Virus record (IMG/VR): IMGVR_UViG_3300015261_000002 | Span: 124,001 to 188,000 of that record | Length of the DNA: 64,000 nucleotides | Direction: 5' to 3' (one strand) | Shown here: piece after piece, positions 39,325 to 60,592 of the stretch | Layout of the letters: the number at the start of each line of letters is the position of its first letter | Numbering within the stretch: the stretch's first letter is position 1 | Translations under genes and position numbers: made by a program | The notes under the pieces: model-generated | The model's database searches: none | Seen by the model: only the letters and a program-made list of their open reading frames with translations | Told to the model about the DNA's origin: nothing

Positions 39325-40023
39325 TTACTTCCAGCGAACAGGGGCAACAAGACCGTCTACAAACTGGAGGATCAGCAGATTGGAAATGCCATCCTTCAAC
39401 TGACAGACAACCTCTGCCTCGGCGAAGTCTTCTGCCGACAGCGACATCTTGAACCCCAACGAGTTTACAAACGTGGAGGCCTTTTCTGCCAGGTCATCGG
39501 GCACGCGTTCTTCTGGTGCATCCGCCGCTTCGAAGATTTTACCCGCCAGCGCCAGACGCACACGCTGTTCTTCGAGATCGACCGCAATGCATTCCTTGGA
39601 ACGCTCAGGAGCATCTTTGTTCTTGACGGTAAAGATCAGGACGCCCGTCAGGCTGATGCTCGATTCCAACATCGGAACCGACACCTGGTACTGGGCTTTA
39701 CTACCGAACTCGACCACGGCACCTTCAACGTCGTAGTCCACCTTATCCAACAGGTGAAGGTCGTACGCGTCAGCGAGTTCCTGGATAACAAGGTTCAGTG
39801 GATCACCCTCACGCGCCGATACTTCTGGCGCACGACGGACCATGACTTGCAAGAGGTTACCCTTGTTCATCTTGGCCTTTTGGGTCTGACCATCTTTCTC
39901 AACGAAAAAGACTGCGGCAGATTCCGACTCCGATTCTGCACGGAGCACTGAGTAACCCTGAGGGAGCTGCTTCTTGAGTCTTTCAAGAAACACTGGGTGG
40001 ACGTTTTCCAAAGCCATTGCCAT
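39325..40023 (-). CDS. Hypothetical virion-associated protein
   Basis: 232 aa, TAATG-coupled to the upstream head gene (SD AAGGAG). Confidence 0.6.
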   Translation of the reverse strand: MAMALENVHPVFLERLKKQLPQGYSVLRAESESESAAVFFVEKDGQTQKAKMNKGNLLQVMVRRAPEVSAREGDPLNLVIQELADAYDLHLLDKVDYDVEGAVVEFGSKAQYQVSVPMLESSISLTGVLIFTVKNKDAPERSKECIAVDLEEQRVRLALAGKIFEAADAPEERVPDDLAEKASTFVNSLGFKMSLSAEDFAEAEVVCQLKDGISNLLILQFVDGLVAPVRWK

Positions 40024-41450
40024 TACTCCTTCTTAGCTTTTTCGTCAGGTTTGTCAGCAGCTTCGTTGGGGAAGATCTTGCTGTTGATACCGGCAGCGGC
40101 TTTGCGGATCCCACTGACCAGTTTCTTGTGAGCAGTAACCTTTTCCTTAAGCCCCTTGAGACTGTCTTTGGCAGCAGCGATCTTTTCCTGGGTCGACTTC
40201 CGGGTGGTGGCAACAACTTCCTTGTTGGCCTCGTCTTTACCCGAAACATTACTGGCTGCGGTTTTCAGCTCAGCAAGTTTCTGTTGAGCAAGGTTCATCG
40301 CCTCACCGAGTGCAGCACCGTAACCGCTCTGCTTGTTCAGCAGACCCAACAGCTTGTCGAGTGCAGTGGCTGCATCTGCCTTACTGTTAAGACCGCCTAC
40401 GATGGCACTGAATGCACCAGAAGGATCGGATTCAGCCGCCAGCTTAACCAGGCCTGCTTTAGCCACCGAGTTGATTTGATCACCCGTAGTCGCCTTGGCA
40501 GCAGCCAGGTCTTTCTTGTTGGCCTCAGCTGCATCAACCGTGGCTTTATTCGTATCCTTTTCATCGGACGAAGTGAACCACTCCTTAATAGCTTTGAAAG
40601 ACTCTGAGATCGTTTCCCAGGCCTTTGTAGCCATTTCCTTGATACCATCCAGGATTGCGCCTTCAGTACCCTCTACAGCGCTCATACGAGCGTTGCGCGC
40701 ACTGGCTACGCCAATGAGGTAGTTCGACGCAAAGGTGTTCTGGCCGTTCAGGTAATCTTCCATACCCTGGAGGAGTTGCAGCGGGTGATCGAACTTGCAA
40801 CCGCAGTCACAATCATCGTTCCGTTGGCAGTCTTCCGGTTCGTCGAAATCAACCACCGGGGCTTCTGGCAGATCTTCCAACTGGGAAGGGGCAAACTCTT
40901 CTGCACCCATTACCATACCGAGACGGCTGGTCACAAACACATCGACGATGTTCAGCACCCGTTCCGCGTACTCCATTTGGCGGATGTTTGCGTTCATGCA
41001 TTCGATGTTTGGTTGTTCATGGCCTTCGTAGATCTCCATGAAGTAGCGAAGACCTTTGTGAGCGAACTCGATCCAGTCATTGACGGCGGCACCGCTCAGG
41101 TGGTCAGAGTTCTTGTTACCGAGCGCGCAGACCTGCATGGCCACATTACGCTCTGGATTACGACCGCCATTCTGGAGGTCAGCCAGCAGTTCGCCGAGGT
41201 ATTGATTGACGAGGGTATTGACAAGCAACTCACTCGCATCGTAATACGCCAGGCGGCTTTCAATAGCGGACACAATGGAGCACATCCGCTCTTTGACACG
41301 GTCGGTATCCGTCGCTTCACCCTCGAACACATAATCGAGTCCGATGGAGCGCAGGAGGTCAACCATCACCGGGTTATTCTCGGCGGTCAGTTTACCAGCT
41401 CTGCCGGTCAGCATGAGGCCAACCAACCCCAATTCAAAGTACAAATTCAT
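40023..41450 (-). CDS. Head/ejection protein, processed paralog family
   Basis: Start ATG 41450 (MNLYFELG, SD GGAGAAGG), 475 aa. AVEGTE|GAILDGIKEMATKAWETISESFKAIKEWF, then a K/A-rich helical C-terminus. Confidence 0.65.
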   Translation of the reverse strand: MNLYFELGLVGLMLTGRAGKLTAENNPVMVDLLRSIGLDYVFEGEATDTDRVKERMCSIVSAIESRLAYYDASELLVNTLVNQYLGELLADLQNGGRNPERNVAMQVCALGNKNSDHLSGAAVNDWIEFAHKGLRYFMEIYEGHEQPNIECMNANIRQMEYAERVLNIVDVFVTSRLGMVMGAEEFAPSQLEDLPEAPVVDFDEPEDCQRNDDCDCGCKFDHPLQLLQGMEDYLNGQNTFASNYLIGVASARNARMSAVEGTEGAILDGIKEMATKAWETISESFKAIKEWFTSSDEKDTNKATVDAAEANKKDLAAAKATTGDQINSVAKAGLVKLAAESDPSGAFSAIVGGLNSKADAATALDKLLGLLNKQSGYGAALGEAMNLAQQKLAELKTAASNVSGKDEANKEVVATTRKSTQEKIAAAKDSLKGLKEKVTAHKKLVSGIRKAAAGINSKIFPNEAADKPDEKAKKE

Positions 41451-41460
41451 TCCCTTCTCC

Positions 41461-41946
41461 TCACAAATACTTGATGGCCACGGTACCGCGGTAGTAGGTG
41501 GCACGGCGCGCAGTGACGTACAGGTAACCATCACTGGTCCCCAATTCCACTTCAAAGCGTCCCAGGTCGCTCAACCCCACCAGCCGCATCCAATTGAAGA
41601 ACAGCTGACTCACCTCATCGCCAGGCTCAGCCTGATCGGCGTCAGTCAGTGTAATGATGGGTTCTTCGACACAACCATCTACCAGGCCTTCGAGGGGCAG
41701 GAGGTCACCTTGCTCAGGCTCACCAAAGGTAATGCCGCTGATATCCTGAGGGATACCTTTGAAGAGTTCCCCCAGGTCTACCTTTTCGATCATCAGGCCG
41801 GCGCCTACGGTGCCTTGTTCAACGTAGGTAAAGATGTTGTCACTCACAGAACGACCAACGCCAAAGCGTGGGTTCAATCCATCAATACCCTGTTGCTCCA
41901 TGGCTTTGGCAACCAACAAAGTTTTGTTAAAGCAATTCAAGCGCAT
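41461..41946 (-). CDS. Hypothetical protein in the head-protein operon
   Basis: 161 aa, acidic, closely spaced with neighbours. Confidence 0.6.
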   Translation of the reverse strand: MRLNCFNKTLLVAKAMEQQGIDGLNPRFGVGRSVSDNIFTYVEQGTVGAGLMIEKVDLGELFKGIPQDISGITFGEPEQGDLLPLEGLVDGCVEEPIITLTDADQAEPGDEVSQLFFNWMRLVGLSDLGRFEVELGTSDGYLYVTARRATYYRGTVAIKYL

Positions 41947-41952
41947 AATGGA

Positions 41953-43008
41953 TTACCCTTTGACGTCGATGCTGCTCGACACAATGCTGGACGCGGTGTT
42001 GTAGACCTTGAACACGAGAGTCTCCAAGAGCTTGATACCCGCCATGCCATTGCGAATGATCTCTTCCAGGCTGTGGGCAATCGCTTTAGCAGCGGCCTGA
42101 TCTTCAGCCTCGGCTTTCTTCGAGAACGCCAGACTGGTATTGAGGCCCTTGATAAAGACCTTTTCCAGCTCTACCGATTTCGTGATCATGCCCTGGAACT
42201 TGGTGTTCATTGTGTCCAGGCTTTTGGCAACCGAACGGGTGGTGGTTTCGCTGCTAATAAAGCCAGCGTTCTTGTCGGATTCCAGCAGATCAGGATCGGC
42301 CTTCAGCGACAGCTTACCGTGCGATGTGATCGACACAGTTGTACCGCCGATATAAGGAGCAGGGTCCTTACCAAAGATCTTGATCAGCGCATCGTGGTGC
42401 TCTTTAAAGAGCTTTTCCATGGCGTCCTTGGTATGGCTCAGCTGCTTGCCAGTAAACAGGGCTTCAGCCTTACGAGCGGTATCACCCACTTCCTTGATGT
42501 ACTCTTCGACCTTACCGGTTGCAGCAGTCCAGTCTGCAATGGCTTTGGTCATCCAATCCAGGTTAGCCGGGATCTTGGCCTTGCTGGCCCACAGGTTCAT
42601 GTAACCCTGGGGATAATGCGTGAAGTGTTTCCTGACCCCGTTCTTATCCAGCTTAGCGATCAGGTCTTTGTTCTTGCGTGCAGCCACTTCTTTCTTGCCG
42701 GTGAAGAAACTGAACACCCACTTGAAGAAGTTCTTTACAGCGGTGATAAGCGAAGACACCATATCACCAATCCAGCTCATGAACCCTTCGGTGCCTTCAA
42801 CACTGTCGAGGTTCTTTTGGCGGGGGATATGGGAAAAGACGTACTGGTAATAGAGACACTCATTACCGGAGACTTTGTCGTATTCGTCAGACAAGTCATC
42901 GATCTTGTCGTCTGGAGCATCCACAACGCTTTCAGGATTCTCGGCGTTGTAGAGTGCTTCAACTGTTGGGGTATTGATAAAACGTCGAGCAAGCACTGGT
43001 TGCGTCAT
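41953..43008 (-). CDS. Head/ejection protein, processed paralog family
   Basis: Start ATG 43008 (MTQPVL), 351 aa; SVEGTE|GFMSWIGDMVSSLITAVKNFFKWVFSFF. Confidence 0.7.
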   Translation of the reverse strand: MTQPVLARRFINTPTVEALYNAENPESVVDAPDDKIDDLSDEYDKVSGNECLYYQYVFSHIPRQKNLDSVEGTEGFMSWIGDMVSSLITAVKNFFKWVFSFFTGKKEVAARKNKDLIAKLDKNGVRKHFTHYPQGYMNLWASKAKIPANLDWMTKAIADWTAATGKVEEYIKEVGDTARKAEALFTGKQLSHTKDAMEKLFKEHHDALIKIFGKDPAPYIGGTTVSITSHGKLSLKADPDLLESDKNAGFISSETTTRSVAKSLDTMNTKFQGMITKSVELEKVFIKGLNTSLAFSKKAEAEDQAAAKAIAHSLEEIIRNGMAGIKLLETLVFKVYNTASSIVSSSIDVKG

Positions 43009-43072
43009 GGTAAAAGTACCTGTTAAAAAGGATATGTAGCAAAACCTATAGCATTCCTCAAAAAACCATATA

Positions 43073-43114
43073 GCAGCCATAAGACTACTAAGGGGGATTG
43101 CTCCCCCTTAGTAG
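43073..43114 (-). terminator. Hairpin terminator
   Basis: 13-bp stem CUACUAAGGGGGA-GCAA-UCCCCCUUAGUAG followed by UCUUAUGGCUGC. Confidence 0.85.
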
Positions 43115-43149
43115 CTACCTTACGGTGGTACAGCAACCGCTACGTCGAC

Positions 43150-44418
43150 TTAGAAGCCGATGTGAGCAGCAACGCAGTCCAGCGTAGCGCCAGCGGCGTT
43201 GACGGCCACTTTGGTCACGTTGGTGGCCATGCTCGAAGTCGAGCTGTAAACAGCCTTGACCAGGTTGACCTGACCGTTGACTTCAGCCGACTTGTCGGCG
43301 TCGCCAGCTTTGATCGAGTTCAGGGAACCGATCACGCGATCACGCTCAGCAGCGCTGAAAGCCTTGGCCACTTTGGTGTTGCGCAGGAACGCGCCGACGC
43401 CACGGACTTCGGAGATCGCTTTCAGCAGGCCAGCCTTGTCGGTTTTGGCCTTGACTTCGCCGGTGGTCAGCTTCTTGGCTTCCGGATCCTTCATCACAAC
43501 CATTTTCAGGGAGCGAGCAGCGGCAGCGGCTTCGGCCATGGTTTTGATTTCGGCATCGCTGTACGAAACCTGGATGCGGATACCGTTCATCACGCCGATC
43601 AGGACGTCATGGGAACCAGCCTTCTTCTCGTTGTACTTGCCGGCCGCCTTGGCGTCGGTTTTGACAGCGGAGATCAGACCGGTGTAAGCCGACTTGAAGT
43701 CTTCCAGGCTGATGCCGGAAACGTTTTTGCCCAGCTCGGTCAGCTTGGCGATCGCGCCTTGGGTGGCTTCGAAGCCTGCGGATTTCACAGTGCCCAGGCC
43801 GCCTTTGGCGTAGTCGACGTAGATGTTCCAGCCGCCCAGCTTGACCATCTCTTTCAGCTTGGCGCCGTCTTCCAGGCGCTTCTTCAGGGTGTCGCAACGG
43901 CGCTCGAGGCCGGCGGCCTTGTCGAAGATCGACACGAAGAAACCGATGACGGTGTTGAAGATGTGCTTGATGAACTCGACGGCTTTCTTGCCGTACTCCT
44001 TGATGGAGTCCATGATGCTTTCCATGCCCTCGCGAGCATGCATCTGAGCGGTCGACGCGTCGGTGATGGATTCAGCACCCATGCGCTCGCCCTGGATGTT
44101 GGCACCCAGTTTGTTGCCGAGTTTCACGCCACGGTTGTAGAGGTGGGCGAAAGCCAGGCCGCTGAAGTTGCCGGAGTTGATCAGGGATTCCATGCCTTCG
44201 ACGACTTCGGTCGCTTCTTCGACGGCTTCTTCCAGATCGTCCATCTTGTCGACCAGCGCTTCAACTTGCTGCGACTGCTCTTCGATGGCCACGGTGACTT
44301 CGGCGATTTCGGTTTTCACCGCTTCTTCGACGGCTTCAACGACTGCTTCACCACCGGCGCCTTGCAGCTCCAGTTCTTCAGCGCCAGTGTACATGTTCAG
44401 AAGATCAATACCGGACAT
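43150..44418 (-). CDS. Abundant head/inner-body protein (phiKZ gp93 / SPN3US gp53-54 family-like)
   Basis: 422 aa, capsid-like codon bias. Glu-rich propeptide with several G-x-E sites ending EGME|SIMDSIKEYGKKAVEFIKHIF. Confidence 0.8.
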   Translation of the reverse strand: MSGIDLLNMYTGAEELELQGAGGEAVVEAVEEAVKTEIAEVTVAIEEQSQQVEALVDKMDDLEEAVEEATEVVEGMESLINSGNFSGLAFAHLYNRGVKLGNKLGANIQGERMGAESITDASTAQMHAREGMESIMDSIKEYGKKAVEFIKHIFNTVIGFFVSIFDKAAGLERRCDTLKKRLEDGAKLKEMVKLGGWNIYVDYAKGGLGTVKSAGFEATQGAIAKLTELGKNVSGISLEDFKSAYTGLISAVKTDAKAAGKYNEKKAGSHDVLIGVMNGIRIQVSYSDAEIKTMAEAAAAARSLKMVVMKDPEAKKLTTGEVKAKTDKAGLLKAISEVRGVGAFLRNTKVAKAFSAAERDRVIGSLNSIKAGDADKSAEVNGQVNLVKAVYSSTSSMATNVTKVAVNAAGATLDCVAAHIGF

Positions 44419-44472
44419 AGCTATGTATCCTTTTTCGTTAACGAAGGAAAATTGTGTGTTTAATTAAACGGT

Positions 44473-45486
44473 TTACGCGAAAACACCAAGCACACCATGA
44501 ATGTACCTGTCGGTGTAGCTGACCACCCGAGGAGTGAATCCGCTATAGAATGCCAACGCATTCGCCTCACCAGAGAGAATCTTCTCACCCTCTGCCATGG
44601 CACTTGAACTAACCTTGTCCAACTTACTCAGGTTAGCGTCAACGGTTTTCACCATATCCGACCAGCTCTTGATAAAGGCCAAGTAGCTGTCGTACGACGA
44701 CTTCAAGCGTTTGTGCATAGAGTTGATCTTGTCCAGCTTGTTCAACAGCGCGTTGACTTCAGACTTGGATAAGGTCGTGGAGGACCCCGCCTCAGCAGGT
44801 GCGTCACCACCTATAACATATTTCGGGTGTTTGCCGTCGCCGTAGACGCATTCCCAGACTTTGCCACCTGGCAGAGTGTCAGAGAACGTCGTGTCGCCTT
44901 TTGAATGCGGCAACTTGAACGGAGGATACTTCAACGCCTCGAACTCCTCCACAATCGCGAAGATGTTCTCAGAGGTTGAAGCACCCTTGAGCTTACGGAC
45001 GACAATCAGCTGCTTGTCCAGGTAACTCAGAATTTCTTTGCTGTGCTTATCCAGTGCATCCAACGTGCTCAGCAGAGTGTCCATATCATGCCCAATATGG
45101 CCAACATCGCCATTCGAGGTGATAAGGGCAATCGTGGTCTTGCTGAGGTTCAGCTCGTGATCTTCGATCTTGCTGAAGCTTTGCGTCAGCTTTTTGATCA
45201 AGGTATCGTTGTCGCTGAAAGCACGGTACAAGCCAGCTCCTGCCGCGCCAAGGGCTTTGCCAAACAGGTCGACAGTCTTACCGCCTACCCACTTGCTGAC
45301 TTCAAAGAGGCCAGCGCCAAGTTCTTTGGCGTTCTCCATAAAGTCTTCATTGCCTTCGACCCGGATCTTCATCCGGTGAGGTTCCGCGAGCAACAGGTTA
45401 CCTGCTTTGTGCAGATCGTTCTGTTCCTCACGGGTCTCCAGATGGTTCTCCAGGCAGGTTTGATATAACCGATGGGTGTTGCTCAT
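44473..45486 (-). CDS. Head protein, processed paralog family
   Basis: 337 aa; VEGNE|DFMENAKELG. Confidence 0.65.
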   Translation of the reverse strand: MSNTHRLYQTCLENHLETREEQNDLHKAGNLLLAEPHRMKIRVEGNEDFMENAKELGAGLFEVSKWVGGKTVDLFGKALGAAGAGLYRAFSDNDTLIKKLTQSFSKIEDHELNLSKTTIALITSNGDVGHIGHDMDTLLSTLDALDKHSKEILSYLDKQLIVVRKLKGASTSENIFAIVEEFEALKYPPFKLPHSKGDTTFSDTLPGGKVWECVYGDGKHPKYVIGGDAPAEAGSSTTLSKSEVNALLNKLDKINSMHKRLKSSYDSYLAFIKSWSDMVKTVDANLSKLDKVSSSAMAEGEKILSGEANALAFYSGFTPRVVSYTDRYIHGVLGVFA

Positions 45487-45497
45487 GTCCAGCCTCC

Positions 45498-46811
45498 TTA
45501 GGGCGTGTTGGCCTTAACCGAGAGGTTAGACAGCTCGATCAAGCCGTGGATGATCAAGGTCAGGTAGCTGGTCAGAGCGGCGCGCAGGTTCAGCAGCTCC
45601 ATTTGGTTACGACGAACAATCGAGGAGAAGGCAGTGAGTACCTTGTCTTTCAGTTCATCGTCCATCTGCGACTCGTAGATACCTTTGGCAACATCGTTGT
45701 AATCGCTGTCCGCCAGTTTGTACTTGTCGCCGGCCTCGTACACCTTGCTCCATTCCTTCAGCAGTTCTTTCAAATGCTTTGCAATGATCTTGATCTGCTG
45801 GGACGATAGGCTCTTCACTTCATTACCCAGTTTCGGGTAAATCACTTCAGAACTGTTTTCGAAGCCGGTGAGTTCTTCGTTGAGGTAGATGTAGAGGAAC
45901 TGATCCACATCTTCCGGCGTGTGCATCCGATAGTTCGGCTTGCTCTGGCGGATATCGATGAAGTACGCACCACCCATCAGCTCCACGGATTGTTTCGCAG
46001 TAACACGACCCGTAGAGAAGTCCTTGTTGACCTTGTTACATTCCTTGAACGGTGTCGACGGCAGTTGCGACGGCAGGTCCAGGAAACGCTCCAGGCCAAG
46101 TTGTTGATCCAAGCCCGCAAACCCGCCAAAGAAGCTCAGGACGGCGTTCATGTTGTTCTTGCTGTTGAGGTAGTAGTTCGAGCTCACCGCCGAGATAGTG
46201 CGGCTCAGCTTGCTCACATCACCTGTCCAGTCACCGGAGATCTGACCATTGATCTTGAACAGGTTAAACAGACGAGCGCCCAGCAACAGGTTCTCACGAC
46301 CTTCATCGAAGCGCGGGGTGGTTTCAATCCCACGTTCCAATGCGTCCACCGCTTCAATCAAACTGTCATGGGTTTGAGTAAAGACGATGTAGGCTTCTTT
46401 AAAGCCGTCGTTGATGCGAACCACTACTTCCTTGGACTTACGGAAGAAGTCACCCAGGAAGCTCTCACAGCCCATCAGGCGCGTCAGAAGGTAATCTTCC
46501 GGCATGAGGGTGCGTCCGAGCGCTTCAGCGCCCTCAACAGCGTCCAAACCGCTTACAGGCGGAATGTCGACATTGGAACGTACCAACGAACCGTCCATGG
46601 CGTTTGCCAGCTCGGGTGTCACCTGGTGAGGTTCAGTGCCTTCAAGCACCGCCTTAACCATGTTGACACGATCCTTGCTGTCATCCAGACGGTTCTGGAA
46701 GCGATCGAGATCACCGGTGTCTTTGGCCAGGCTGACAATCTCCGCAGACTTAACAGCGGAGATAGCGGCCATTTCGGCCGCCAGCTGGAGTTCCTGGTTA
46801 ATTTGACCCAT
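45498..46811 (-). CDS. Head protein (phiKZ gp92-like position)
   Basis: Start ATG 46811 (MGQINQEL), 437 aa; GTE, GAE and MGCE|SFLGDFF motifs. Confidence 0.65.
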   Translation of the reverse strand: MGQINQELQLAAEMAAISAVKSAEIVSLAKDTGDLDRFQNRLDDSKDRVNMVKAVLEGTEPHQVTPELANAMDGSLVRSNVDIPPVSGLDAVEGAEALGRTLMPEDYLLTRLMGCESFLGDFFRKSKEVVVRINDGFKEAYIVFTQTHDSLIEAVDALERGIETTPRFDEGRENLLLGARLFNLFKINGQISGDWTGDVSKLSRTISAVSSNYYLNSKNNMNAVLSFFGGFAGLDQQLGLERFLDLPSQLPSTPFKECNKVNKDFSTGRVTAKQSVELMGGAYFIDIRQSKPNYRMHTPEDVDQFLYIYLNEELTGFENSSEVIYPKLGNEVKSLSSQQIKIIAKHLKELLKEWSKVYEAGDKYKLADSDYNDVAKGIYESQMDDELKDKVLTAFSSIVRRNQMELLNLRAALTSYLTLIIHGLIELSNLSVKANTP

Positions 46812-47316
46812 AGTAGGCTTCTCCTCCAAGCAGCAGGAAGATACGCCCGACAACACCAGCGCCTACACCTGCCATGAGACGATAGAGATCGTTGTCGAAG
46901 ACTTTGTCCCCATCCTGCAAGAAGGCCGCATGGCCACCTGTACGGGAGGTAGGGGTATAAGTGCCGTAACGGCTGCTGGCAGCATCCTGGAGTTTGTTTT
47001 CCTGGATACCAACAGAGGTGATCAGCTGACGATGACCACAACGACCATTCAGGTAATGAATGATGTCGCGGATCAGTTCAGACAAAGGACCCTTGCCGTT
47101 GTCGAAGTTGACTTCCATCCACCCTGCAAAGGAAGTACCGCACAGGGCAGTGACTTCGCGCAGGGTCTCGATGGTTACGTCACCTTTCATGATGAGCTCA
47201 AAATCCTGGTACGCATCCTGACGGAGGTACTTCAGGTTCTTGAACATGGTTGCCAGTTCACCTTCACTCAGGTTAGCACTGACGTACCCGTTGTTACCCC
47301 GGCGAAATTCAGGCAT
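46798..47316 (-). CDS. Conserved hypothetical protein (phiKZ gp91-like position)
   Basis: Start ATG 47316 (MPEFRRG), 172 aa, overlap-coupled on both sides. Confidence 0.6.
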   Translation of the reverse strand: MPEFRRGNNGYVSANLSEGELATMFKNLKYLRQDAYQDFELIMKGDVTIETLREVTALCGTSFAGWMEVNFDNGKGPLSELIRDIIHYLNGRCGHRQLITSVGIQENKLQDAASSRYGTYTPTSRTGGHAAFLQDGDKVFDNDLYRLMAGVGAGVVGRIFLLLGGEAYYGSN

Positions 47317-49287: not shown

Positions 49288-49320
49288 TTTTAATTACCTT
49301 CATTAATGGGAGCCAGAGAA

Positions 49321-53328: not shown

Positions 53329-53329
53329 A

Positions 53330-53388: not shown

Positions 53389-53395
53389 GTACAAC

Positions 53396-54154
53396 TTATT
53401 CCGCAGGCTGTTCCATCGGAGTCCCTGGGTACTTCAGGTTCAGGTATTCCGCAAACATGAACGGCAGCTTCAACTTGTTGCACATGTCGCTCGTGCGCCA
53501 AGAGAAGTCCTTCAGACTGTAACCCGTCAACTTCAGGTCAGGCTTGAAGGTACCTTCCAGATAGCTGGAGTGCGCCTTAGCCATGATGTCCTTGAACTCG
53601 TTAACAAAGAGGTAGTCCCCGTTGATGACGATATCCGGAACACGGTTGAGTTGATCCCACGAGGTGAGCGAACCGTCTTTCAACTTCTGCTCAGCTTCGT
53701 AGAAGTAGTCGCCGGTGTACGCGGTGTATTTCAACACCTCGCAACGGAACTCGTTCAGACGTTCCTGGCTCTCCACCGTGAAGTCAGCTGCGAGCAGCTC
53801 TTTCATTGTGGTGTTGACGACCTGGTCGATGTAGGCGTAAATGACCTCGAAGTACTCGCGGGTTTCTTTCAGCTCGCCCAGTTGCTTGCGTGCTTCTTCA
53901 ACGGGCAGGCCTGCATACAGCACAACAGACTTGTTCGTTTCAGGAAAGCATTCGGACAACTGAACAATCAGCGAGTTAGCCCGAGAGCTACTACCCCAGA
54001 TACCGCGGATGATCTTTGTAGCGACCGGCAGTGGAAGACCTTCGTCTTCCATCGCGGTGATCAGGGATTCGAGTTCGTCGATGTACGTCTGAGTCGTGAC
54101 ATCAGCCACACCCTTCAGTTTGACGATCTCTTCCCACATGGCTGCTCGGCTCAT
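53396..54154 (-). CDS. Head-associated hypothetical protein
   Basis: 252 aa, ATGA-coupled to 54151..55665. Confidence 0.6.
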   Translation of the reverse strand: MSRAAMWEEIVKLKGVADVTTQTYIDELESLITAMEDEGLPLPVATKIIRGIWGSSSRANSLIVQLSECFPETNKSVVLYAGLPVEEARKQLGELKETREYFEVIYAYIDQVVNTTMKELLAADFTVESQERLNEFRCEVLKYTAYTGDYFYEAEQKLKDGSLTSWDQLNRVPDIVINGDYLFVNEFKDIMAKAHSSYLEGTFKPDLKLTGYSLKDFSWRTSDMCNKLKLPFMFAEYLNLKYPGTPMEQPAE

Positions 54155-55665
54155 AGCAATTTACCTGCTCCGATTTGCTTGGTGAAGTTGTTGAGGTTGG
54201 TCTTAACCCCACCAATATCACTTTGGATGGCGAAGTTCACGTTGGCGGTCAACTTCTCGCCAAACGTTTTTGCATCGGCATCCTTGATGAACACACGACC
54301 TTCGATGATCGGGCTCAGACCGCGAGAGCGTGCCTCAGCAACGATCTTCTCGACCGCCTCGATATCGCCGACCACACCACTGTAGTAGTAGGCATGGATG
54401 CGACCGTACCATTCAACCAGGCTGACGATCTGCCGTTCAACGCGGAGAACTTCCTTGTTGATGGAGTAGCACATCTGGCTGAAGTTACGGCAAGCGACGC
54501 TCAACATCTGGTAGTCGGATAGCAGTTGCGGTGCGTTGTAGTAGGTCGCCATCGCGCTGATCTTTTCAGAGTCAGACTTGTCGATGATCTCGCCTAGTGC
54601 TTTCCAGTTGACTTTCGAGATATCAACCTCGTCGTCCACCAGTTCCTGGTAACGCACGTTCAGACGCTGGATCTCGAGCAGGGTAGCGGACACATCCACA
54701 CCGGCTACAGTCGAAGCACTTGCCACAACTTCGGTCTTCAGGCGGTTCTGTACCTGGTCAAACTTGTTGGCCAGTTCTTCGTTCGAGAAGTCAAGGCTAT
54801 ACAGATCCTTGTACAGTTTGCTCATGAGACCAGAGATCTCTTCAACGCCAAAGGTCAGCAGCGTTTCGTTCATTGCCTTGGTGATAACAATCACTTCGGT
54901 AGACGATTCACCGGCGACGTGGTTACCCGACTTGTGACGCACACGAGAACGGTTGTACTCGTCGAGGATCACTTTCTTCAGACGCTTCTGAGCGATCGTA
55001 ACCTTGTCAGTGGCCTGCTTGATCTTCACGTTCAGCTGCTGGATCAACGGAACACTGGCCGCCAGCTTCTTCACTTGATCGATATCGCTATCGAGCTTGT
55101 TCTTCAGCAGGTGGATCTGTGCAACACGATCCTTGTCCTTTGGCAGGCTGCCGAGGAACTTCTCGACGTTGTACTCAGCGACGTTGAAGCCAAAGCTGAT
55201 CAGCGTGTCTTCGAACTCTTTCTTCAGATCGCCGAGGCTGTCATTGATGGCTTTGGTGATCCGTTCCGACTTGCGGAAACCGAAGATCCCTTTAACCATG
55301 TCGACAACCCAGTCGATGGCCATGCGGATGTAACGAATGATGGTTTCGATGAAGTCTTTGAAACCGGTGTAGACCGCACTGAAGAAGCCTTCAGCGCCCA
55401 TGCGAGCGTTGCGCTCCGAAGGGAACGGGTCATAGTTCTCGACGCCTTTGAGTTTGAGGTGGCGGGCAACCTGCTTGGAGAAACGACCGAGGCTCAGTTG
55501 TTCGGAACCCATCACCATAACGGTGGCGTTGTTCTGTTCACTGACCTGGTAGTATTCAGTCAGGTCGATACGTTGTTTGTTTTCGCCAGGCTGATACGAA
55601 TCAACCGGCTCCGCATTACCGTACTGCTGGTAATCGTCAATCTTGGTAGTGGCGGAGTCACTCAC
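54151..55665 (-). CDS. Head/ejection protein, processed family
   Basis: 504 aa; RMGAE|GFFSAVYTGFKDFIETIIRYIRMAIDWV, followed by coiled coils. Confidence 0.7.
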   Translation of the reverse strand: MSDSATTKIDDYQQYGNAEPVDSYQPGENKQRIDLTEYYQVSEQNNATVMVMGSEQLSLGRFSKQVARHLKLKGVENYDPFPSERNARMGAEGFFSAVYTGFKDFIETIIRYIRMAIDWVVDMVKGIFGFRKSERITKAINDSLGDLKKEFEDTLISFGFNVAEYNVEKFLGSLPKDKDRVAQIHLLKNKLDSDIDQVKKLAASVPLIQQLNVKIKQATDKVTIAQKRLKKVILDEYNRSRVRHKSGNHVAGESSTEVIVITKAMNETLLTFGVEEISGLMSKLYKDLYSLDFSNEELANKFDQVQNRLKTEVVASASTVAGVDVSATLLEIQRLNVRYQELVDDEVDISKVNWKALGEIIDKSDSEKISAMATYYNAPQLLSDYQMLSVACRNFSQMCYSINKEVLRVERQIVSLVEWYGRIHAYYYSGVVGDIEAVEKIVAEARSRGLSPIIEGRVFIKDADAKTFGEKLTANVNFAIQSDIGGVKTNLNNFTKQIGAGKLL

Positions 55666-56053
55666 GGCCGGCCTCCAGTTCTTTTACCAGGTAGTCGGTC
55701 AGAACGGAGCAGGCCGGCAGCTCGCCAACGTCCACGTCATTCACGATGGTGGTGAACTCTTTCTTGCACGGCAGGGTGCCGGTGTTCATCATCACACCGT
55801 TCAGCATGCCGATGCGCACTTGAGCGGTCTTGTGGATCAGCGGGGCTGGGATAGGGGATACCTTGTTCCACTTGTCGAGCATGGCCCAGGCTTTCTCATC
55901 CATCTCGGTGGTCCAACCGCCCAGACGGTACGAACGACGGATCAGGGCACGGGCGAACGGTTCGGCCAGCAGCTTGCTCTGCTCGATGGGACAGGTGATA
56001 CCTTTTTCGGTCAGGGCTTTCTTGAATTCAACAACATGGATCAAATGCGACAT
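55658..56053 (-). CDS. Small conserved hypothetical protein
   Basis: 131 aa, overlap-coupled in the operon. Confidence 0.6.
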   Translation of the reverse strand: MSHLIHVVEFKKALTEKGITCPIEQSKLLAEPFARALIRRSYRLGGWTTEMDEKAWAMLDKWNKVSPIPAPLIHKTAQVRIGMLNGVMMNTGTLPCKKEFTTIVNDVDVGELPACSVLTDYLVKELEAGRE

Positions 56054-56080
56054 GGTAGAGTTCCTTGCAAGGGGAGAGGG

Positions 56081-57484
56081 TTAGAATTCGTACGTCTTGT
56101 TTTCTTCTGGACTCTTGTCCGTTCCGTCACGACGCGCTTTCAGGTTGGCCAGTTTTACAGCAATGGTGTTCACCTCGTGGTTGGCGACCACAGAAGTGTA
56201 ATGTTCAACTTCTTGGGCTTTAAAGTCAGACTGACTGAACACCCAACCCATGAAGCGGTGGATCACGGTACTCTCATACCAAGGACGCAGGTCTTTCGCA
56301 TGGTTCAGCAGTTGCTGCACTTCATCTGCCAGGGCATTCTTTTCAGAGGCCGGCATCTTCGTGTCCTCTTTCAGCTTTTGGATCAGCTGACGGACAGCAT
56401 CTTCAAACCGACGGTGGTCAGCGTTATAGACGCCCGAGTAACCTTTGCTGAAGTAGTTCAGAACAAAGATAAACATATAGAAGACCATGGCCATGAACAA
56501 AGCACCGGCGACGCCGATAGAGATCGTTACCGAGAGCCAGGCAGGCAATGCAATGATCGTGGTCACTGCGGCAATCATCAGGCTGTTGACAACCGTTTGG
56601 ATGCAACCCTGGTCAGTCAGGATGCCGATCGCTGCGATAATGCCCTTGTCACAGCCCATGCGGATGGCGTACATGTCAGCCACAACTTCGGACGACATCG
56701 ACTCAACCCCTACCGACAAACTGCGTCGCATATTACGTTGGGCGATTAATTTATCGAAGTAGAGGAAGACAGTCTTGTCATCCTGTTCTTGGGCGAGCAT
56801 TTGCAGCTCACCTTGTTTGGCCGCTGGAACATCCAGCAGAGAAGCAACATCCTTGAGCACTACAACGCGATCTGAGACGTCTTTAGCCTCGCGATAGTAG
56901 AGCAGGGCGCTCTTCAGGTAGAGGTTGTCAGACGCGACTGTGAGCAGCATCATGCAACCGCTGAACACATGACCGAGTTCGTGGGCGATCGCACCTGCCA
57001 GGATACCCGGCAACGGTACGCCAAACTTCTTCACCTTATCGGCTGGGAAGGTAGCGTTCAGGTCAGGGTTGATCTGGAAGGTCACGGGTACGGTTTGGAA
57101 GGAACCGAGGACCTTACCACTGGTGTAATCGATGCCACCTTTAAACACCTTGTCCTTGTTCTGGGTAAACCAGCGGTACAGGGTGGTTTGAGTTGGCTTC
57201 AGCAGGTCGTCTACCAGTGCGTTGTTCAGCACATGGTTGGGGGAGAAGTAACCGGCGTCAACAGACAGGTTTCCGCTCTTGGAGAACTTCATGTCCACGT
57301 TCTTGAAACCCGTGAACTCCTCGATGAGGTCTTTGATGCCTGGGATGGCTTCTTTACTCAGAACACCGTCGGGACCAATCTGACTTTCGAGGTACAGCGA
57401 CAGCTTGCGGTAGAAGTCAGTGGACTGGAAGTTAATGAACTCCAACCCTCCGACGGGTCGTTTCAAAAAATCCATCGAGATCAT
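56081..57484 (-). CDS. Membrane-anchored HExxH zinc metallopeptidase-like protein in the head operon
   Basis: 467 aa. GAIAHELGH plus downstream SEVVADMYA (gluzincin/M48-like E-x-x-A-D), then a hydrophobic stretch of about 50 aa. Confidence 0.65.
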   Translation of the reverse strand: MISMDFLKRPVGGLEFINFQSTDFYRKLSLYLESQIGPDGVLSKEAIPGIKDLIEEFTGFKNVDMKFSKSGNLSVDAGYFSPNHVLNNALVDDLLKPTQTTLYRWFTQNKDKVFKGGIDYTSGKVLGSFQTVPVTFQINPDLNATFPADKVKKFGVPLPGILAGAIAHELGHVFSGCMMLLTVASDNLYLKSALLYYREAKDVSDRVVVLKDVASLLDVPAAKQGELQMLAQEQDDKTVFLYFDKLIAQRNMRRSLSVGVESMSSEVVADMYAIRMGCDKGIIAAIGILTDQGCIQTVVNSLMIAAVTTIIALPAWLSVTISIGVAGALFMAMVFYMFIFVLNYFSKGYSGVYNADHRRFEDAVRQLIQKLKEDTKMPASEKNALADEVQQLLNHAKDLRPWYESTVIHRFMGWVFSQSDFKAQEVEHYTSVVANHEVNTIAVKLANLKARRDGTDKSPEENKTYEF

Positions 57485-57567
57485 GCACCTGTACTCCTCA
57501 AAGATATTTATTACTGGGACGCCATTGGTATAGCGCTAAAAGCGGGCATAAAATGCAGGATAAACCC

Positions 57568-59427
57568 ATGACACAAAATCTTTCACCAATTATCGCGAAA
57601 GTCTGCAAACATGCTCATTATTCAGAGCATCGCTGGGACAAAACCAAAGACCTCCTCACAGCGAAGATCACGAACATCCATGAGGACGGTACTCGGTCGA
57701 CAACCTTTAAGTCCTACGAGAATTACAAGCAGCCGTTCTGGATCATTAAGGAACAGCATCGCAAGTTCAACCAACCAAAGGACTACATCGAAGAACGGTA
57801 CGTCAGGGAATACCGTTGCAATCGTCGTCAGATTCCATTTGAAGTCAAGAAGCAGTTGTTTGGGGCAGCTGATCGCAGTGCTTCGATTTATGACATCAAG
57901 TCGGGCAAAGGTATTCAATACGTGTTTGGTCTTGACCAGACGCCTGCGGTGCATTTGAAGCAACAGTTCTTTAAACGGTATGCGGAATACCAGGAAAAAG
58001 AAAAGTACACCATTGCGGCATTCGACGTTGAAGCCGACATGGAAGCGATTGGTGAAGTGAAACCGATCATGATGGCTTCGGTCACTATGAAGGACAAAGC
58101 TTACTTCGCCGGGTGCCGGGGTTGGTATCAGTCTCGGCAGGACAAGATTGACCCGAAGGTTCGTTTAACTGACTTTGCGATTTTAGCGGAGTTAAAAGCG
58201 GCCGAGAAGAAGTACCTGCAAGAACACTTGGATCGTCGAGGTTGCACGATTGAGTATGAGTTGTTCGATACACCGGGTCAGGTAGCCTTTGCTTGTATTC
58301 AGAAGTTCCACGAGTGGGAACCAGACTGGGTACTGAGCTGGAACGCCGCTTACGATATGGAAGCGTGTGAGCGTGCATTGCGGTCCGAGGGTTATAACCT
58401 GGCCGACGTGTATTGCGATCCTCGTGTTCCAAAAGAGTATCGGATGTATGAACTTAACCTGGGTCGTACACACAAGGTTAAAGAGAACGGCGACCGTACT
58501 CCTCTCGAACCTCAAGAGAAGTTCCCAACCGTTCGTTGTGTAGCAACATGGCAGTGGGCTGATGCCATGTCGGGTTATGCCATCAAGCGATTCTCTTCGG
58601 GTAAGCTCGAGAGTTACTCGCTGGAGGCGACTGCGCAACGGGAGAAGGTCAAGGGTAAGCTGTACACCGAAGAAGGCGCTGATAAGCTCCCAGGGTCTCC
58701 TCAGTGGCATCGATACATGCAGAAGCATTATCCGTATCTGTATTCGATGTACAACATTGGCGATAACTTCCCAATCGAAGAGATCAACGAAACCACGCTG
58801 GACTTTGTACTGTCGATTCCAATGCTGCTGCGTTATTCGGAGTATTTCAACTTCGTTTCGCAACCACGTTTGATTGCAGATACCTTGTCCTTTATTGCGC
58901 GTGAGCATGGTTACGTTTGGGGCAGCACTCCTGCTAAACGGGATAAAGTCTTTACTGACCGACTGCCGACTCTCGACAACTGGATTGCACTTCTCGATAC
59001 TGAGAAGAACGCAGACATGGGTCGGGCAATCTTTATCGGTCTGGATGACGTTATCAGTGCGGGTCGTGGTCTTACTGACGACCTTGACGTTGAAGGGGCG
59101 TACCCAACCGGTACACTGGCTTCTAACGCAGCGAACAAAACCACGCAGATGGAGGTGTATGCCATTCAGGGTGCTAATGACATGAAGTTCCGGGAGATTG
59201 CCGTGAACTATGCCAGCAGTACTCAAGCGAATGCCATGGGTCTGAGTCACGCACTGTTCCGTTTCCCACAAGCCGACAAACTGCAATCTGAGTTTGAGAA
59301 AGGTTTGGAAGAACTGGGTTATGCAGACATGTTGAAGCAACTGCGTGAAAGTGCAGAGAAAGCAAAAGCAGAACGAGAAGCACGTCAAGCCAAAGTCCTA
59401 CCAGAAGTACTGAAAGAAGCGGCGTAA
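57568..59427 (+). CDS. Split family-B DNA polymerase, exonuclease plus motif-A subunit (phiKZ gp82-like)
   Basis: Start ATG 57568 (SD AGGA), 619 aa. ExoI AAFDVEAD, ExoII SWNAAYD, ExoIII MYNIGD and motif-A-like DLDVEGAYPT; no motif B or C. Confidence 0.88.
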   Translation: MTQNLSPIIAKVCKHAHYSEHRWDKTKDLLTAKITNIHEDGTRSTTFKSYENYKQPFWIIKEQHRKFNQPKDYIEERYVREYRCNRRQIPFEVKKQLFGAADRSASIYDIKSGKGIQYVFGLDQTPAVHLKQQFFKRYAEYQEKEKYTIAAFDVEADMEAIGEVKPIMMASVTMKDKAYFAGCRGWYQSRQDKIDPKVRLTDFAILAELKAAEKKYLQEHLDRRGCTIEYELFDTPGQVAFACIQKFHEWEPDWVLSWNAAYDMEACERALRSEGYNLADVYCDPRVPKEYRMYELNLGRTHKVKENGDRTPLEPQEKFPTVRCVATWQWADAMSGYAIKRFSSGKLESYSLEATAQREKVKGKLYTEEGADKLPGSPQWHRYMQKHYPYLYSMYNIGDNFPIEEINETTLDFVLSIPMLLRYSEYFNFVSQPRLIADTLSFIAREHGYVWGSTPAKRDKVFTDRLPTLDNWIALLDTEKNADMGRAIFIGLDDVISAGRGLTDDLDVEGAYPTGTLASNAANKTTQMEVYAIQGANDMKFREIAVNYASSTQANAMGLSHALFRFPQADKLQSEFEKGLEELGYADMLKQLRESAEKAKAEREARQAKVLPEVLKEAA

Positions 59428-59428
59428 A

Positions 59429-59477
59429 GCAGCTATAAACCCTCCTACTCCCTTTGTCGGGGAGTAGGAGGGTTTAT
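59429..59477. terminator. Bidirectional terminator
   Basis: 18-bp stem ATAAACCCTCCTACTCCC / GGGAGTAGGAGGGTTTAT preceded by GCAGCT. Confidence 0.85.
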
Positions 59478-59512
59478 TCACGATCGATGCTCAGAACGCC
59501 TTACAGACGTTA

Positions 59513-60592
59513 TTAAGCAGCGATACCAAAGACCTTGTTCAGGGCATTGGACGCTTCGGTCACGCGGGTGTAGTTGGCTTCGATCAGCTTGGACGCTTTA
59601 ACGCCAGTACCAACGATCACACGCAGAGCGGCGATGTCTTTCTGGAGTTCAGTTTTGTCTTTCGCTTCTTTGGCCTTCTTCATCTTCGCTTCAGCGCTGG
59701 CCAGCAGTTTCTCGATGGCCGACTTCTTGTTCTTGAATTCGTCGGAGAACGCCTTCAGGGACACGATGTTGGTGGCGCAGTCTTTGCTGAACTGGATGGC
59801 AGCAGCAGGCTCGGTGATGGAGGTGGCTTTTTCCAGCTTGGCCAGGAACTGAGCGTCCCGGGTCATGAACTTGGTAACCAGGCCAGCCATGTCGATGGCG
59901 TTGTCGGTGAAGTCGGTGTTACCCGACAGGTGACCGGCGGCTTGCTTTTCCTTGTCGCTGCCCTGGGAAGTGGCGAGGGTCAGGAATGCTTTCTTCGCCT
60001 TCACAGCCGCAGCCACAACGTTGGCCAGAGTTGCTTGAGCCTTCTTGTTCATCTTGCCCATTTCTTTCAGGGCAGCCTTGACGGCGTCGCGCTTCTCTTT
60101 CAGGCCCTTCTTCTTGGCGTCAGCGATTTCTTTCGCAGTTGCTTCGGAAACGTTGCCGGCCATCGCGTTCAGTTGCTTGTCGGCGGTGGCTTCGTCCTGG
60201 GTACCCGAAACAGCGGCTTGGAGTTCAGCAGCGTTTTCGTTGCACGCTTCTTTGGCCACTTCAGCGTCTTTGGCGCTGTCACGGTTGAAGAAGAAGTCCC
60301 AGATGGACTTGAAGGTTTTAGCGATGTAGTCATACACCGCTTTGAAGCCGTTGCCGATGGCGGAGAACACGCCTTCGTTACCGGTCACTTGAGCGCCGGT
60401 AATAATGCCAGCAGCACTGAGCACGCCTTGAGCATAACGCTGAGCGTCAGTCAGGGAGATCGATTCGGTACCCGCAACGTCCAGCTGTTCAGCCGTATCG
60501 TTGAGGGCGTCGAACATGATCTCGACGTGCGGTACGTCGGGGAGACCAAAGCCGTCGCCATCAGGTTGGTAGGAGCCTTCTACGTATTCCAT
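59513..60592 (-). CDS. Abundant head/ejection protein paralog
   Basis: 359 aa, capsid-like codon bias; AGTE and TGNE|GVFSAIGNGFKAVYDYIAKTFKSIWDFFF; K/A-rich body like 40023..41450. Confidence 0.7.
   Translation of the reverse strand: MEYVEGSYQPDGDGFGLPDVPHVEIMFDALNDTAEQLDVAGTESISLTDAQRYAQGVLSAAGIITGAQVTGNEGVFSAIGNGFKAVYDYIAKTFKSIWDFFFNRDSAKDAEVAKEACNENAAELQAAVSGTQDEATADKQLNAMAGNVSEATAKEIADAKKKGLKEKRDAVKAALKEMGKMNKKAQATLANVVAAAVKAKKAFLTLATSQGSDKEKQAAGHLSGNTDFTDNAIDMAGLVTKFMTRDAQFLAKLEKATSITEPAAAIQFSKDCATNIVSLKAFSDEFKNKKSAIEKLLASAEAKMKKAKEAKDKTELQKDIAALRVIVGTGVKASKLIEANYTRVTEASNALNKVFGIAA

What the first reader, a model, noticed from the sequence alone, without database searches (positions are those of the whole stretch)
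40023..60592. Five to seven head proteins expose an aromatic amphipathic helix right after the last G-x-E
Predicted mature N-termini read GFMSWIGDMVSSLITAVKNFFKWVFSFF, GFFSAVYTGFKDFIETIIRYIRMAIDWV, GVFSAIGNGFKAVYDYIAKTFKSIWDFFF, SIMDSIKEYGKKAVEFIKHIFNTVIGFF and GAILDGIKEMATKAWETISESFKAIKEWF. The 44473 and 45498 genes have weaker versions. The paralog family itself is known (phiKZ gp93, SPN3US gp53/54). The inference is that proteolysis unmasks membrane-binding helices, so that ejected proteins can bend inner membrane to build the early phage infection vesicle described for phiKZ-like phages.
Basis: partly seen in the sequence, partly recalled or inferred. Interest (0 to 1): 0.62.

Follow-up and report, generated by a model that had tools for sequence, protein, structure and literature searches.

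The report
Conserved helix after head-protein cleavage site
Six related internal head proteins of a new giant (phiKZ-like) phage each start their mature form with a strongly two-faced, aromatic helix. The pattern is real and conserved across the family, but the evidence favours a role in packing against other head proteins rather than in shaping host membrane.

Summary
All five quoted peptides are in the window on the minus strand, each directly after a G-x-E. Each ranks above the 99th percentile of helical hydrophobic moment for this phage's 215 predicted proteins. They are not independent coincidences. One inherited 45-residue module (cut site plus helix) occurs in exactly six proteins of the genome: five in the window and one outside it. 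The two "weaker" genes are confirmed as weaker.

The module is the most conserved block in all four families examined. It recurs in 98 of 102 representatives of the gp93-like PF12699 subfamily. It also coincides with mass-spectrometry-verified mature N-termini of Salmonella phage SPN3US gp53 and gp54.

AlphaFold models suggest that acidic propeptide helices bundle with this helix, so unmasking by proteolysis is plausible. Membrane bending is untested, and several facts argue against it:
- phiKZ gp86 has the same feature but stays on the capsid wall, and structural alignment to its solved structure indicates the helix is ordered in a bundle.
- Head-retained paralogs carry the helix too.
- Its polar face is almost as conserved as its hydrophobic face.
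- It is not cationic.

My best reading is a maturation-switch helix used for protein-protein packing. Lipid contact after ejection remains a minority possibility.

The parts
59513..60592 (-). Gene for a 359-aa internal head protein. It has an acidic propeptide (residues 1-73, pI 4.1), a G-N-E cut site at residues 71-73 and a basic mature part (pI 9.3).
   Evidence: ORF and translation. phrog_21850, 9e-44. 41 homologs. Charge split. AF2 model pLDDT 82.9, pTM 0.81.
60287..60373 (-). Post-cut aromatic amphipathic segment of the 59513 gene. Moment 0.67, 9 aromatics in 30 residues.
   Evidence: It is the most conserved block of the family, with entropy 0.76-0.98 against 2-3 elsewhere. In the AF2 model residues 70-72 have pLDDT below 50, and the helix runs 79-129.
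54151..55665 (-). Gene for a 504-aa head protein, the positional counterpart of phiKZ gp86, SPN3US gp47 and RisingSun gp59. G-A-E cut site at residues 90-92.
   Evidence: phrog_14541 'virion structural protein'. Synteny anchored by gp87-gp90 homologs. RisingSun gp59 at 1.7e-136. Some homologs carry PF12699.
55306..55389 (-). Post-cut aromatic amphipathic segment of the 54151 gene. Moment 0.66, 7 aromatics.
   Evidence: The block around the cut is the most conserved in 34 homologs, with entropy 0.48-0.94.
43150..44418 (-). Gene for a 422-aa PF12699 internal head protein (gp93-like). It has four conserved G-x-E sites, ending at residues 14, 77, 116 and 133. The propeptide has pI 4.1 and the mature part pI 9.5.
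   Evidence: Pfam 135 bits. phrog_5750. Invariant G/E columns. Charges. AF2 model pLDDT 88.6, pTM 0.82.
43936..44019 (-). Post-cut amphipathic segment of the 43150 gene. Moment 0.62, 5 aromatics.
   Evidence: In 98 of 102 subfamily representatives the aligned site is [SAGT]-x-E followed by such a helix. AF2 puts the cut inside one long helix, 121-183.
41953..43008 (-). Gene for a 351-aa head protein (ATG start model). G-T-E cut site at residues 72-74. Propeptide pI 4.3, mature part pI 9.4.
   Evidence: 27 homologs.
42703..42786 (-). Post-cut segment of the 41953 gene. It is the most hydrophobic of the set: 8 aromatics and a Wimley-White interfacial free energy of -5.1 kcal/mol over 19 residues (0.2 percentile).
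   Evidence: Nearly invariant across 27 homologs, with entropy 0.28.
40023..41450 (-). Gene for a 475-aa head protein with a long acidic propeptide (263 residues, net charge -24). G-T-E cut site at residues 261-263.
   Evidence: phrog_27616, 2e-86.. Homolog of RisingSun gp73.
40575..40661 (-). Post-cut amphipathic segment of the 40023 gene. Moment 0.62, but it is glutamate-rich and interfacially unfavourable (+2.6 kcal/mol).
44473..45486 (-). Gene for a 337-aa weak PF12699 member. The helix after G-N-E (residue 47) is weak: moment 0.47, 89th percentile. It is not hit by the module HMM.
45498..46811 (-). Gene for a 437-aa PF12699 member. The helix after it has moment 0.58 and 6 aromatics. The module HMM does not hit it.

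Best explanation
The window holds the inner-body and vertex-complex gene block of a new chimallivirus-like jumbo phage. Its nearest isolates are Erwinia phages RisingSun and Joad, at about 48% amino-acid identity.

Six paralogous head proteins share one inherited module: a G-x-E cut site for the gp175-type prohead protease, followed within 0-6 residues by a long helix with a straight aromatic hydrophobic stripe.

The proposed mechanism is a maturation switch.
1. In the precursor, strongly acidic propeptide helices pack on this stripe and neutralise the basic body of the protein.
2. The protease cuts at several G-x-E sites.
3. The acidic pieces leave, or stay on the shell as they do in phiKZ.
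4. The freed stripe of the now basic mature protein then packs against other head proteins and lies among the DNA, forming the inner body or vertex complexes.

What is shown: the module itself, its conservation, the acidic/basic split, and the match of the cut position with MS-verified homologs.

What is inferred: that the propeptide covers the stripe (from AF2 secondary structure and bundle alignments, without coordinates), and that the freed stripe is used for protein contacts (by analogy with the solved phiKZ gp86). Later contact of the same stripe with lipid in the ejected members is allowed but not required.
For: - A module HMM hits exactly 6 of 215 proteins at E below 3e-4, with the next hit at E = 0.92. 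The same six positional homologs are hit in RisingSun.
- The helix is the most conserved block in four families.
- Its polar face is almost as conserved as its hydrophobic face, and both are far more conserved than the rest of the mature protein. This points to sequence-specific contacts all round the helix.
- In the five strong basic members (40023, 41953, 43150, 59513 and the out-of-window copy) the propeptides have pI 4.1-4.4 and the mature parts pI 9.0-9.5. 54151 is near neutral, at 4.9 and 7.8.
- In the AF2 model of 43150, the long helices 24-81 (propeptide), 121-183 (which spans the cut) and 374-419 are aligned together to four-helix bundles: 152 residues, rmsd 3.0, Z 10.
- In the AF2 model of 59513, the cut lies in a low-confidence loop, and bundle matches span residues 15-340.
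- phiKZ gp86 (PDB 8y6v chain G) has the same feature, with moment 0.76 after I-S-Q-E at residue 116. It is a capsid-wall vertex-complex protein. Its model begins near the verified cut, and its bundle is joined by a helix of gp162. The structural alignment to the 43150 model begins at entry residue 120.
- Head-retained phiKZ gp162 also carries such a helix.
Against: - No coordinates were available, so burial of the stripe in precursor or mature form was not measured.
- The homodimer prediction gave no verdict.
- The gp86 analogy rests on synteny and a middling structural score. Z is 8.5, below the roughly 13 noise level for helical proteins, and sequence homology of 54151 to gp86 could not be shown.
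- High hydrophobicity plus aromatic richness is unusual for an ordinary soluble bundle helix. The joint moment-and-hydrophobicity rank is 2e-5 to 8e-4 of proteome windows, and interfacial free energy is negative in 5 of 8 copies. This would suit a lipid interface.
- The periodicity is 3.62-3.67 residues per turn, not a heptad.
Confidence: 0.5

Rival explanations
1. Cleavage unmasks a membrane-active N-terminal helix. After ejection it inserts into the interface of inner-membrane lipid and anchors the basic, DNA-bound proteins to the early infection vesicle, or helps form or stabilise that vesicle. The logic is the same as for adenovirus protein VI. The specific claim that the helices bend the membrane to build the vesicle is a narrower subset, which I put at about 0.1.
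For: - The moment is at the 99th percentile or above, together with high mean hydrophobicity and 4-9 aromatics.
- The Wimley-White interfacial free energy is -1.8 to -5.1 kcal/mol for five copies.
- The hydrophobic stripe is straight, at 3.62-3.67 residues per turn.
- SPN3US gp47, in the same gene position as 54151, has a fully apolar segment right after its verified cut (Kyte-Doolittle 2.58). Its authors speculated that it contacts host membrane.
- phiKZ and Goslar homologs are injected, colocalise with membrane dye at the vesicle, and pull down membrane proteins.
- The role of these proteins is stated to be unknown.
- The best structural analogue of the 59513 bundle is apolipophorin III, at Z 11.1, which is within noise for helical bundles.
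Against: - The helices are not cationic. The HeliQuest discriminant is 0.59-0.96, never above 1.34, and the 40023 copy is interfacially unfavourable.
- Polar-face residues are conserved.
- The same helix is present in capsid-retained gp86 and gp162.
- Injected inner-body proteins are reported to move on with the DNA to the nucleus, while the virion polymerase stays at the pole.
- Inference from membrane biophysics: a wedge inserted from the vesicle lumen bends the bilayer the wrong way for enclosing that lumen.
- Cryo-tomography has been read as the tail tube and DNA inflating the vesicle.
- No sequence match to solved fusion peptides was found.
Confidence: 0.25
2. The conserved block exists mainly for the assembly machinery. 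It may be a docking surface (exosite) for the prohead protease on the primed side of the cut, or a capsid-targeting signal recognised by the scaffold or shell. Its amphipathic character would then be incidental.
For: - Conservation spans both sides of the cut and includes polar residues.
- All six substrates share it.
- Several conserved G-x-E sites per propeptide indicate tight coupling to the protease.
- Propeptide parts of phiKZ gp93 and gp162 bind the shell.
Against: - Other protease substrates, such as SPN3US gp45 and gp50, lack such a helix after their cuts.
- The upstream G-x-E sites in the same propeptides are not followed by one.
- 30 residues of strict helical periodicity is far more than a protease subsite needs.
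- In T4 and SPN3US the targeting role is assigned to the N-terminal end of the propeptide.
Confidence: 0.12
3. This is a chance or compositional artefact. Every helix in an all-helical protein is amphipathic, and G-x-E is common.
For: - There are 253 G-x-E sites in the proteome.
- These proteins are almost wholly helical.
Against: - In most of these proteins it is the top-ranked helix.
- It is the most conserved block.
- It is detected by one HMM in exactly six proteins.
- It recurs in 98 of 102 remote representatives.
Confidence: 0.02

Closest known systems
phiKZ-like internal head (inner body) proteins, Pfam PF12699: phiKZ gp92-97, gp162 and gp163; SPN3US gp53 and gp54; Goslar gp53-58
   Same: - Same gene block and order.
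- Pfam hits for three of the genes.
- Acidic propeptides cut at small-x-E sites.
- An amphipathic helix directly after the last cut. This is MS-verified in SPN3US gp53 and gp54, with moments 0.74 and 0.76, and is present in phiKZ gp93-97.
   Different: - Identity is only 20-48%.
- Four of the seven genes fall below Pfam detection.
- The helices here are aromatic and near neutral, whereas phiKZ's are aliphatic and lysine-rich with 0-2 aromatics.
phiKZ gp86 / Goslar gp65, vertex-binding complex proteins (PDB 8Y6V chain G; 11fg)
   Same: - Gene position matches 54151.
- A small-x-E cut is followed by an aromatic amphipathic helix with moment 0.76.
- The helical-bundle fold aligns with the 43150 model over 213 residues.
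- There is a weak sequence hit of 59513 to a PDB chain titled 'PVC Protein gp65' (entry 11fg), E = 0.012. I take this chain to be Goslar gp65, from its name and its length of 934 residues, but the entry's source was not checked.
   Different: - Sequence homology of the 54151 family to gp86 or gp65 could not be shown.
- gp86 is a fixed capsid-wall component, not known to be ejected.
- SPN3US gp47, at the same position, has an apolar transmembrane-like segment instead.
Adenovirus protein VI, a maturation-protease-processed internal capsid protein with a membrane-lytic N-terminal amphipathic helix. This comparison comes from my own knowledge and was not tested here.
   Same: - It is an internal capsid protein cut by the maturation protease next to an amphipathic helix.
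- It is released at entry.
   Different: - There is no homology.
- Membrane activity of the phage helices is untested.
- The phage proteins are large basic bundles present in hundreds to thousands of copies.
- The host membrane is enclosed, not lysed.
Exchangeable apolipoproteins (apolipophorin III, PDB 1aep)
   Same: - It is the top structural match of the 59513 model: Z 11.1, 144 of 153 residues aligned, rmsd 3.7.
- It is an up-and-down bundle of amphipathic helices.
   Different: - Z is below the roughly 13 level at which helical-bundle matches become informative.
- The aligned range, 105-359, excludes the post-cut segment.
- There is no sequence similarity.

Membership tests
Pfam PF12699 (phiKZ-like internal head proteins) | Score above the Pfam gathering cut-off of 27 bits | tested here: met
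   43150 scores 135.1 bits, 45498 scores 128.9 and 44473 scores 32.0. This applies to these three genes only.
Pfam PF12699 (phiKZ-like internal head proteins) | The same cut-off, applied to 40023, 41953, 54151 and 59513 | tested here: not met
   No hit at E up to 0.1. These four are tied to the family only by the shared module HMM (E 1e-5 to 3e-4), by PF12699 hits on four 54151 homologs, by BFVD fold matches and by synteny.
Pfam PF12699 (phiKZ-like internal head proteins) | N-terminal propeptide removed by the gp175-type prohead protease at small-x-E | tested here: inconclusive
   Conserved G-x-E columns. A gp175 homolog in the genome at 5e-21. Agreement in position with MS-verified SPN3US sites. 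Actual cleavage in this phage was not observed.
Pfam PF12699 (phiKZ-like internal head proteins) | Packaged in the head at high copy; many members ejected | not testable with these tools
   Known only for phiKZ, Goslar and SPN3US, from the papers read.
Lipid-binding amphipathic helices (HeliQuest criteria) | High hydrophobic moment with a hydrophobic face | tested here: met
   Moment 0.60-0.67 and mean hydrophobicity 0.31-0.69.
Lipid-binding amphipathic helices (HeliQuest criteria) | Discriminant 0.944*moment + 0.33*charge above 1.34 (0.68-1.34 counts as possible) | tested here: not met
   The discriminant is 0.59-0.96 for seven copies and -0.22 for 44473, with net charge -2 to +1. Five of eight copies fall in the 'possible' band and none in the 'lipid-binding' band.
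Lipid-binding amphipathic helices (HeliQuest criteria) | Favourable interfacial partitioning (Wimley-White) | tested here: inconclusive
   Clearly negative for five of eight copies (-1.8 to -5.1 kcal/mol over 19 residues), marginally negative for 45498 (-0.9), and positive for 40023 and 44473.
Lipid-binding amphipathic helices (HeliQuest criteria) | Measured binding to bilayers | not testable with these tools
   Needs liposome assays.
Protease-unmasked membrane-active capsid proteins (adenovirus VI type) | Helix masked in the precursor and freed by the maturation cut | tested here: inconclusive
   AF2 secondary structure and bundle alignments place propeptide helices alongside the helix. No coordinates or contact maps were available.
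Protease-unmasked membrane-active capsid proteins (adenovirus VI type) | Membrane disruption or remodelling by the mature form | not testable with these tools
Vertex-binding complex protein gp86/gp65 (for gene 54151) | Sequence or fold homology to phiKZ gp86 or Goslar gp65 | tested here: inconclusive
   Gene position matches. The profile of 34 homologs finds neither protein in the PDB. Local HMM alignments line up the cut site but are not significant, at E 0.012-0.016.

The most novel reading that the evidence does not exclude
The maturation cut creates, on a whole set of basic DNA-coating ejection proteins, a conserved N-terminal membrane-seeking helix. After ejection, hundreds to thousands of these helices would tether the incoming genome to inner-membrane lipid and stabilise, seal or help pinch off the early infection vesicle. 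That would be the first phage counterpart of the protease-primed membrane-active capsid proteins of animal viruses. It would also give the PF12699 family the function it still lacks.
Probability: 0.2. Interest if true: 0.8.

Novelty: new member of a known kind. Interest (0 to 1): 0.45.

Why it matters
[quoted passage not shown] The same work asks how the lipid of the early infection vesicle is shaped.

The conserved cut-site-plus-helix module is the one feature shared by all these diverged paralogs. None of the papers I searched or read applies the word 'amphipathic' to these proteins. The nearest remark is a predicted transmembrane segment in SPN3US gp47.

The module therefore offers a small, precise target for mutagenesis, about 30 residues long. 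That experiment could separate an assembly role from a membrane role. If the helix is only a packing element, the finding is a useful annotation rule for predicting mature N-termini in this family, and no more than that.

Tried and rejected
- A megablast search of the locus against phage genomes found nothing. Relatives are visible only at protein level.
- A Foldseek search of the 59513 model against the PDB found nothing at E up to 0.001.
- A homodimer prediction for mature 43150 (residues 134-422, two copies) gave no verdict, with score 0.00 against a mark of 0.42. It counts neither for nor against self-association.
- I recalled a resemblance to the influenza HA2 fusion peptide. The 37-residue post-cut segment finds no fusion peptide, or anything else significant, among PDB sequences. 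The idea is dropped as a membership claim.
- The phiKZ gp162 helix 163-181, which joins the gp86 bundle, is not the equivalent helix. It lies in an intermediate fragment. The amphipathic helix of gp162 is near residues 274-295.
- A profile of the 54151 family against the PDB found neither gp86 nor gp65.
- The periodicity test gave 98-99.5 degrees against 100 for controls. It excludes a heptad coiled coil but is too coarse to tell lipid binding from straight-bundle packing.
- The 2012 phiKZ proteolysis paper (PMC3323674) is not held, so phiKZ cut sites are taken second-hand.
It was redone from coordinates.

Full report
**What is in the window.**
- The region 40-61 kb is a minus-strand block of head genes in a 224.7 kb, 51.6% GC phage genome, held as one contig. 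The window is C1:124001-188000.
- Nothing matches at DNA level in the phage collection.
- At protein level the nearest isolates are Erwinia phages RisingSun and Joad (about 48% identity) and Pseudomonas phage EL (about 41%).
- The genome also occurs in an ENA metagenome assembly.
- Gene order matches RisingSun gp57-gp73, phiKZ gp84-gp97 and SPN3US gp45-gp54. Clear homologs of phiKZ gp87, gp88, gp89 and gp90 anchor the synteny.
- A homolog of the phiKZ head maturation protease gp175 lies elsewhere in the genome, at C1:25173-26033.

**The observation.** All five quoted peptides exist, each directly after a G-x-E.
- Measured against every 30-residue segment of the phage's 215 predicted proteins, they lie at the 99.1st to 99.9th percentile of helical hydrophobic moment. 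They carry 4-9 aromatic residues.
- The amphipathic pattern starts at the second residue after the cut and holds for about 30 residues.

**One module, six copies.** I built an HMM from 45 alignment columns around the cut and helix of the 59513 family.
- It finds exactly six of the 215 proteins at E below 3e-4, each aligned at its cut site. The next hit is at E = 0.92.
The sixth is a 332-residue paralog outside the window, at C1:62231-63229.
- The same HMM picks the six positional homologs in RisingSun.
- The excess of strong helices after G-x-E (9 of 253 sites against 2.5 expected) therefore reflects shared ancestry, not repeated coincidence.

**Conservation.**
- In the 59513 family (34 sequences, down to 27% identity), the 54151 family (34 sequences) and the 41953 family (27 sequences), the cut site plus helix is the least variable block of the protein.
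- A full scan of 1.84 billion cluster representatives with the gp93-like 43150 protein returned 106 relatives. For the distant ones, only the N-terminal half, which includes this block, still aligns.
- In 98 of the 102 long enough to align, a small-x-E lies at the aligned site and is followed by a helix. The median moment is 0.60, the median aromatic count is 5 and the median net charge is +2.
- Both faces of the helix are conserved well above the rest of the mature protein, and the polar face is almost as conserved as the hydrophobic one.

**Do the cuts happen there?** This cannot be tested for this phage.
- In SPN3US, mass spectrometry places the mature N-termini of gp53 and gp54 at the equivalent positions. 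The segments that follow have moments of 0.74 and 0.76.
- phiKZ gp93 to gp97 show the same arrangement after I/V-S-x-E, but with aliphatic, lysine-rich helices.
- The gp93-like family has four conserved G-x-E sites in its propeptide. This agrees with the multiple cuts seen in SPN3US gp53.

**Structure.**
- AlphaFold2 with these alignments gives confident models: 59513 has pLDDT 82.9 and pTM 0.81, and 43150 has pLDDT 88.6 and pTM 0.82.
- In 59513 the cut lies in a low-confidence loop (residues 70-72). The segment after it is the start of one 51-residue helix.
- In 43150 the cut lies inside a 63-residue helix.
- Structural alignments to small four-helix bundles span the propeptide helices, this helix and the C-terminal helix together. 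In the precursor the propeptide therefore probably lies along the stripe.
- Propeptides are strongly acidic (pI 4.1-4.4) and the mature parts basic (pI 9.0-9.5) in the five strong basic members. 54151 is near neutral.
- I had no coordinates, so burial is inferred, not measured.

**The membrane idea.** In favour:
- the very high moment combined with high hydrophobicity and aromatic content;
- negative Wimley-White interfacial free energies for five copies;
- a straight stripe of 3.62-3.67 residues per turn;
- the apolar segment after the verified cut of SPN3US gp47, which its authors thought might touch host membrane;
- published evidence that phiKZ and Goslar homologs are injected and sit at the vesicle.

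Against:
- the helices are near neutral, and none reaches the HeliQuest lipid-binding threshold;
- the polar face is conserved;
- phiKZ gp86 carries the strongest such helix (moment 0.76), yet it is an ordered component of the vertex-binding complex on the capsid wall. Its solved structure begins near its cut and contains a helix bundle that another protein's helix joins;
- phiKZ gp162, reported to stay in the head, has the helix too;
- injected inner-body proteins are reported to leave with the DNA for the phage nucleus;
- by general membrane physics (inference), helices wedged into the lumen-facing leaflet would bend the bilayer away from enclosing that lumen;
- reviews attribute vesicle inflation to the tail tube and DNA.

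**Verdict.** The feature is real, inherited and family-wide, and it is a good predictor of mature N-termini. I read it chiefly as a maturation switch. An acidic propeptide covers an aromatic stripe until the protease removes it. The stripe then makes protein contacts in the filled head. I give this 0.5. A post-ejection lipid role for the ejected members remains possible at about 0.25. The specific vesicle-bending claim is at about 0.1.

Among the papers I could search, none describes these helices as amphipathic or membrane-binding. The function of the family is openly stated to be unknown. The hypothesis is therefore worth a bench test even though present evidence leans against it.

Noticed in passing
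window 56081-57484 (-): This 467-aa head protein is the positional homolog of phiKZ gp84, SPN3US gp45 and RisingSun gp57. It has an HExxH motif at residue 168 and two truly hydrophobic transmembrane-like segments: residues 295-313 (Kyte-Doolittle 1.87) and 323-341 (2.40). The motif and one hydrophobic peak are conserved in all three relatives. It has no Pfam hit. A priori it is a better candidate for membrane insertion at ejection than the amphipathic helices.
   Followed up: partly
genome contig C1:62231-63229 (+), outside the window: A sixth strong copy of the cut-site-plus-helix module, in a 332-aa paralog of the 59513 gene. The module HMM scores it at 2e-22. It has moment 0.61 and 9 aromatics, and it sits far from the main head-gene block.
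   Followed up: partly
window 43150-44418 (-), residues 12-14, 75-77, 114-116 and 131-133: Four invariant or nearly invariant G-x-E sites lie in the propeptide of the gp93-like family. The propeptide is therefore probably chopped into several acidic pieces, as reported for SPN3US gp53.
   Followed up: partly
window 40023-60592, and the paralog outside the window: There is a sharp charge split. Propeptides have pI 4.1-4.4 and net charge -9 to -24. Mature parts have pI 9.0-9.5 in the five strong basic members. The mature parts of 44473 and 45498 are acidic, and that of 54151 is near neutral. This suggests DNA-coating roles for the basic ones.
   Followed up: partly
window 46798-47316 (-): This is the positional homolog of the phiKZ vertex-complex protein gp91. 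It ends in a hydrophobic glycine- and leucine-rich stretch (residues 147-165, Kyte-Doolittle 1.77).
   Followed up: no
window 41344-43026 (+): A 560-codon open frame lies on the opposite strand and overlaps the 40023 and 41953 genes. Codon scoring and homology favour the minus-strand genes, so it is a shadow ORF that naive length-based gene calling picks up.
   Followed up: yes
genome contig C1:81509-81700 (-), outside the window: A 63-aa predicted protein weakly matches the helix part of the 54151 module HMM, at E = 7e-4 in a 215-protein search.
   Followed up: no
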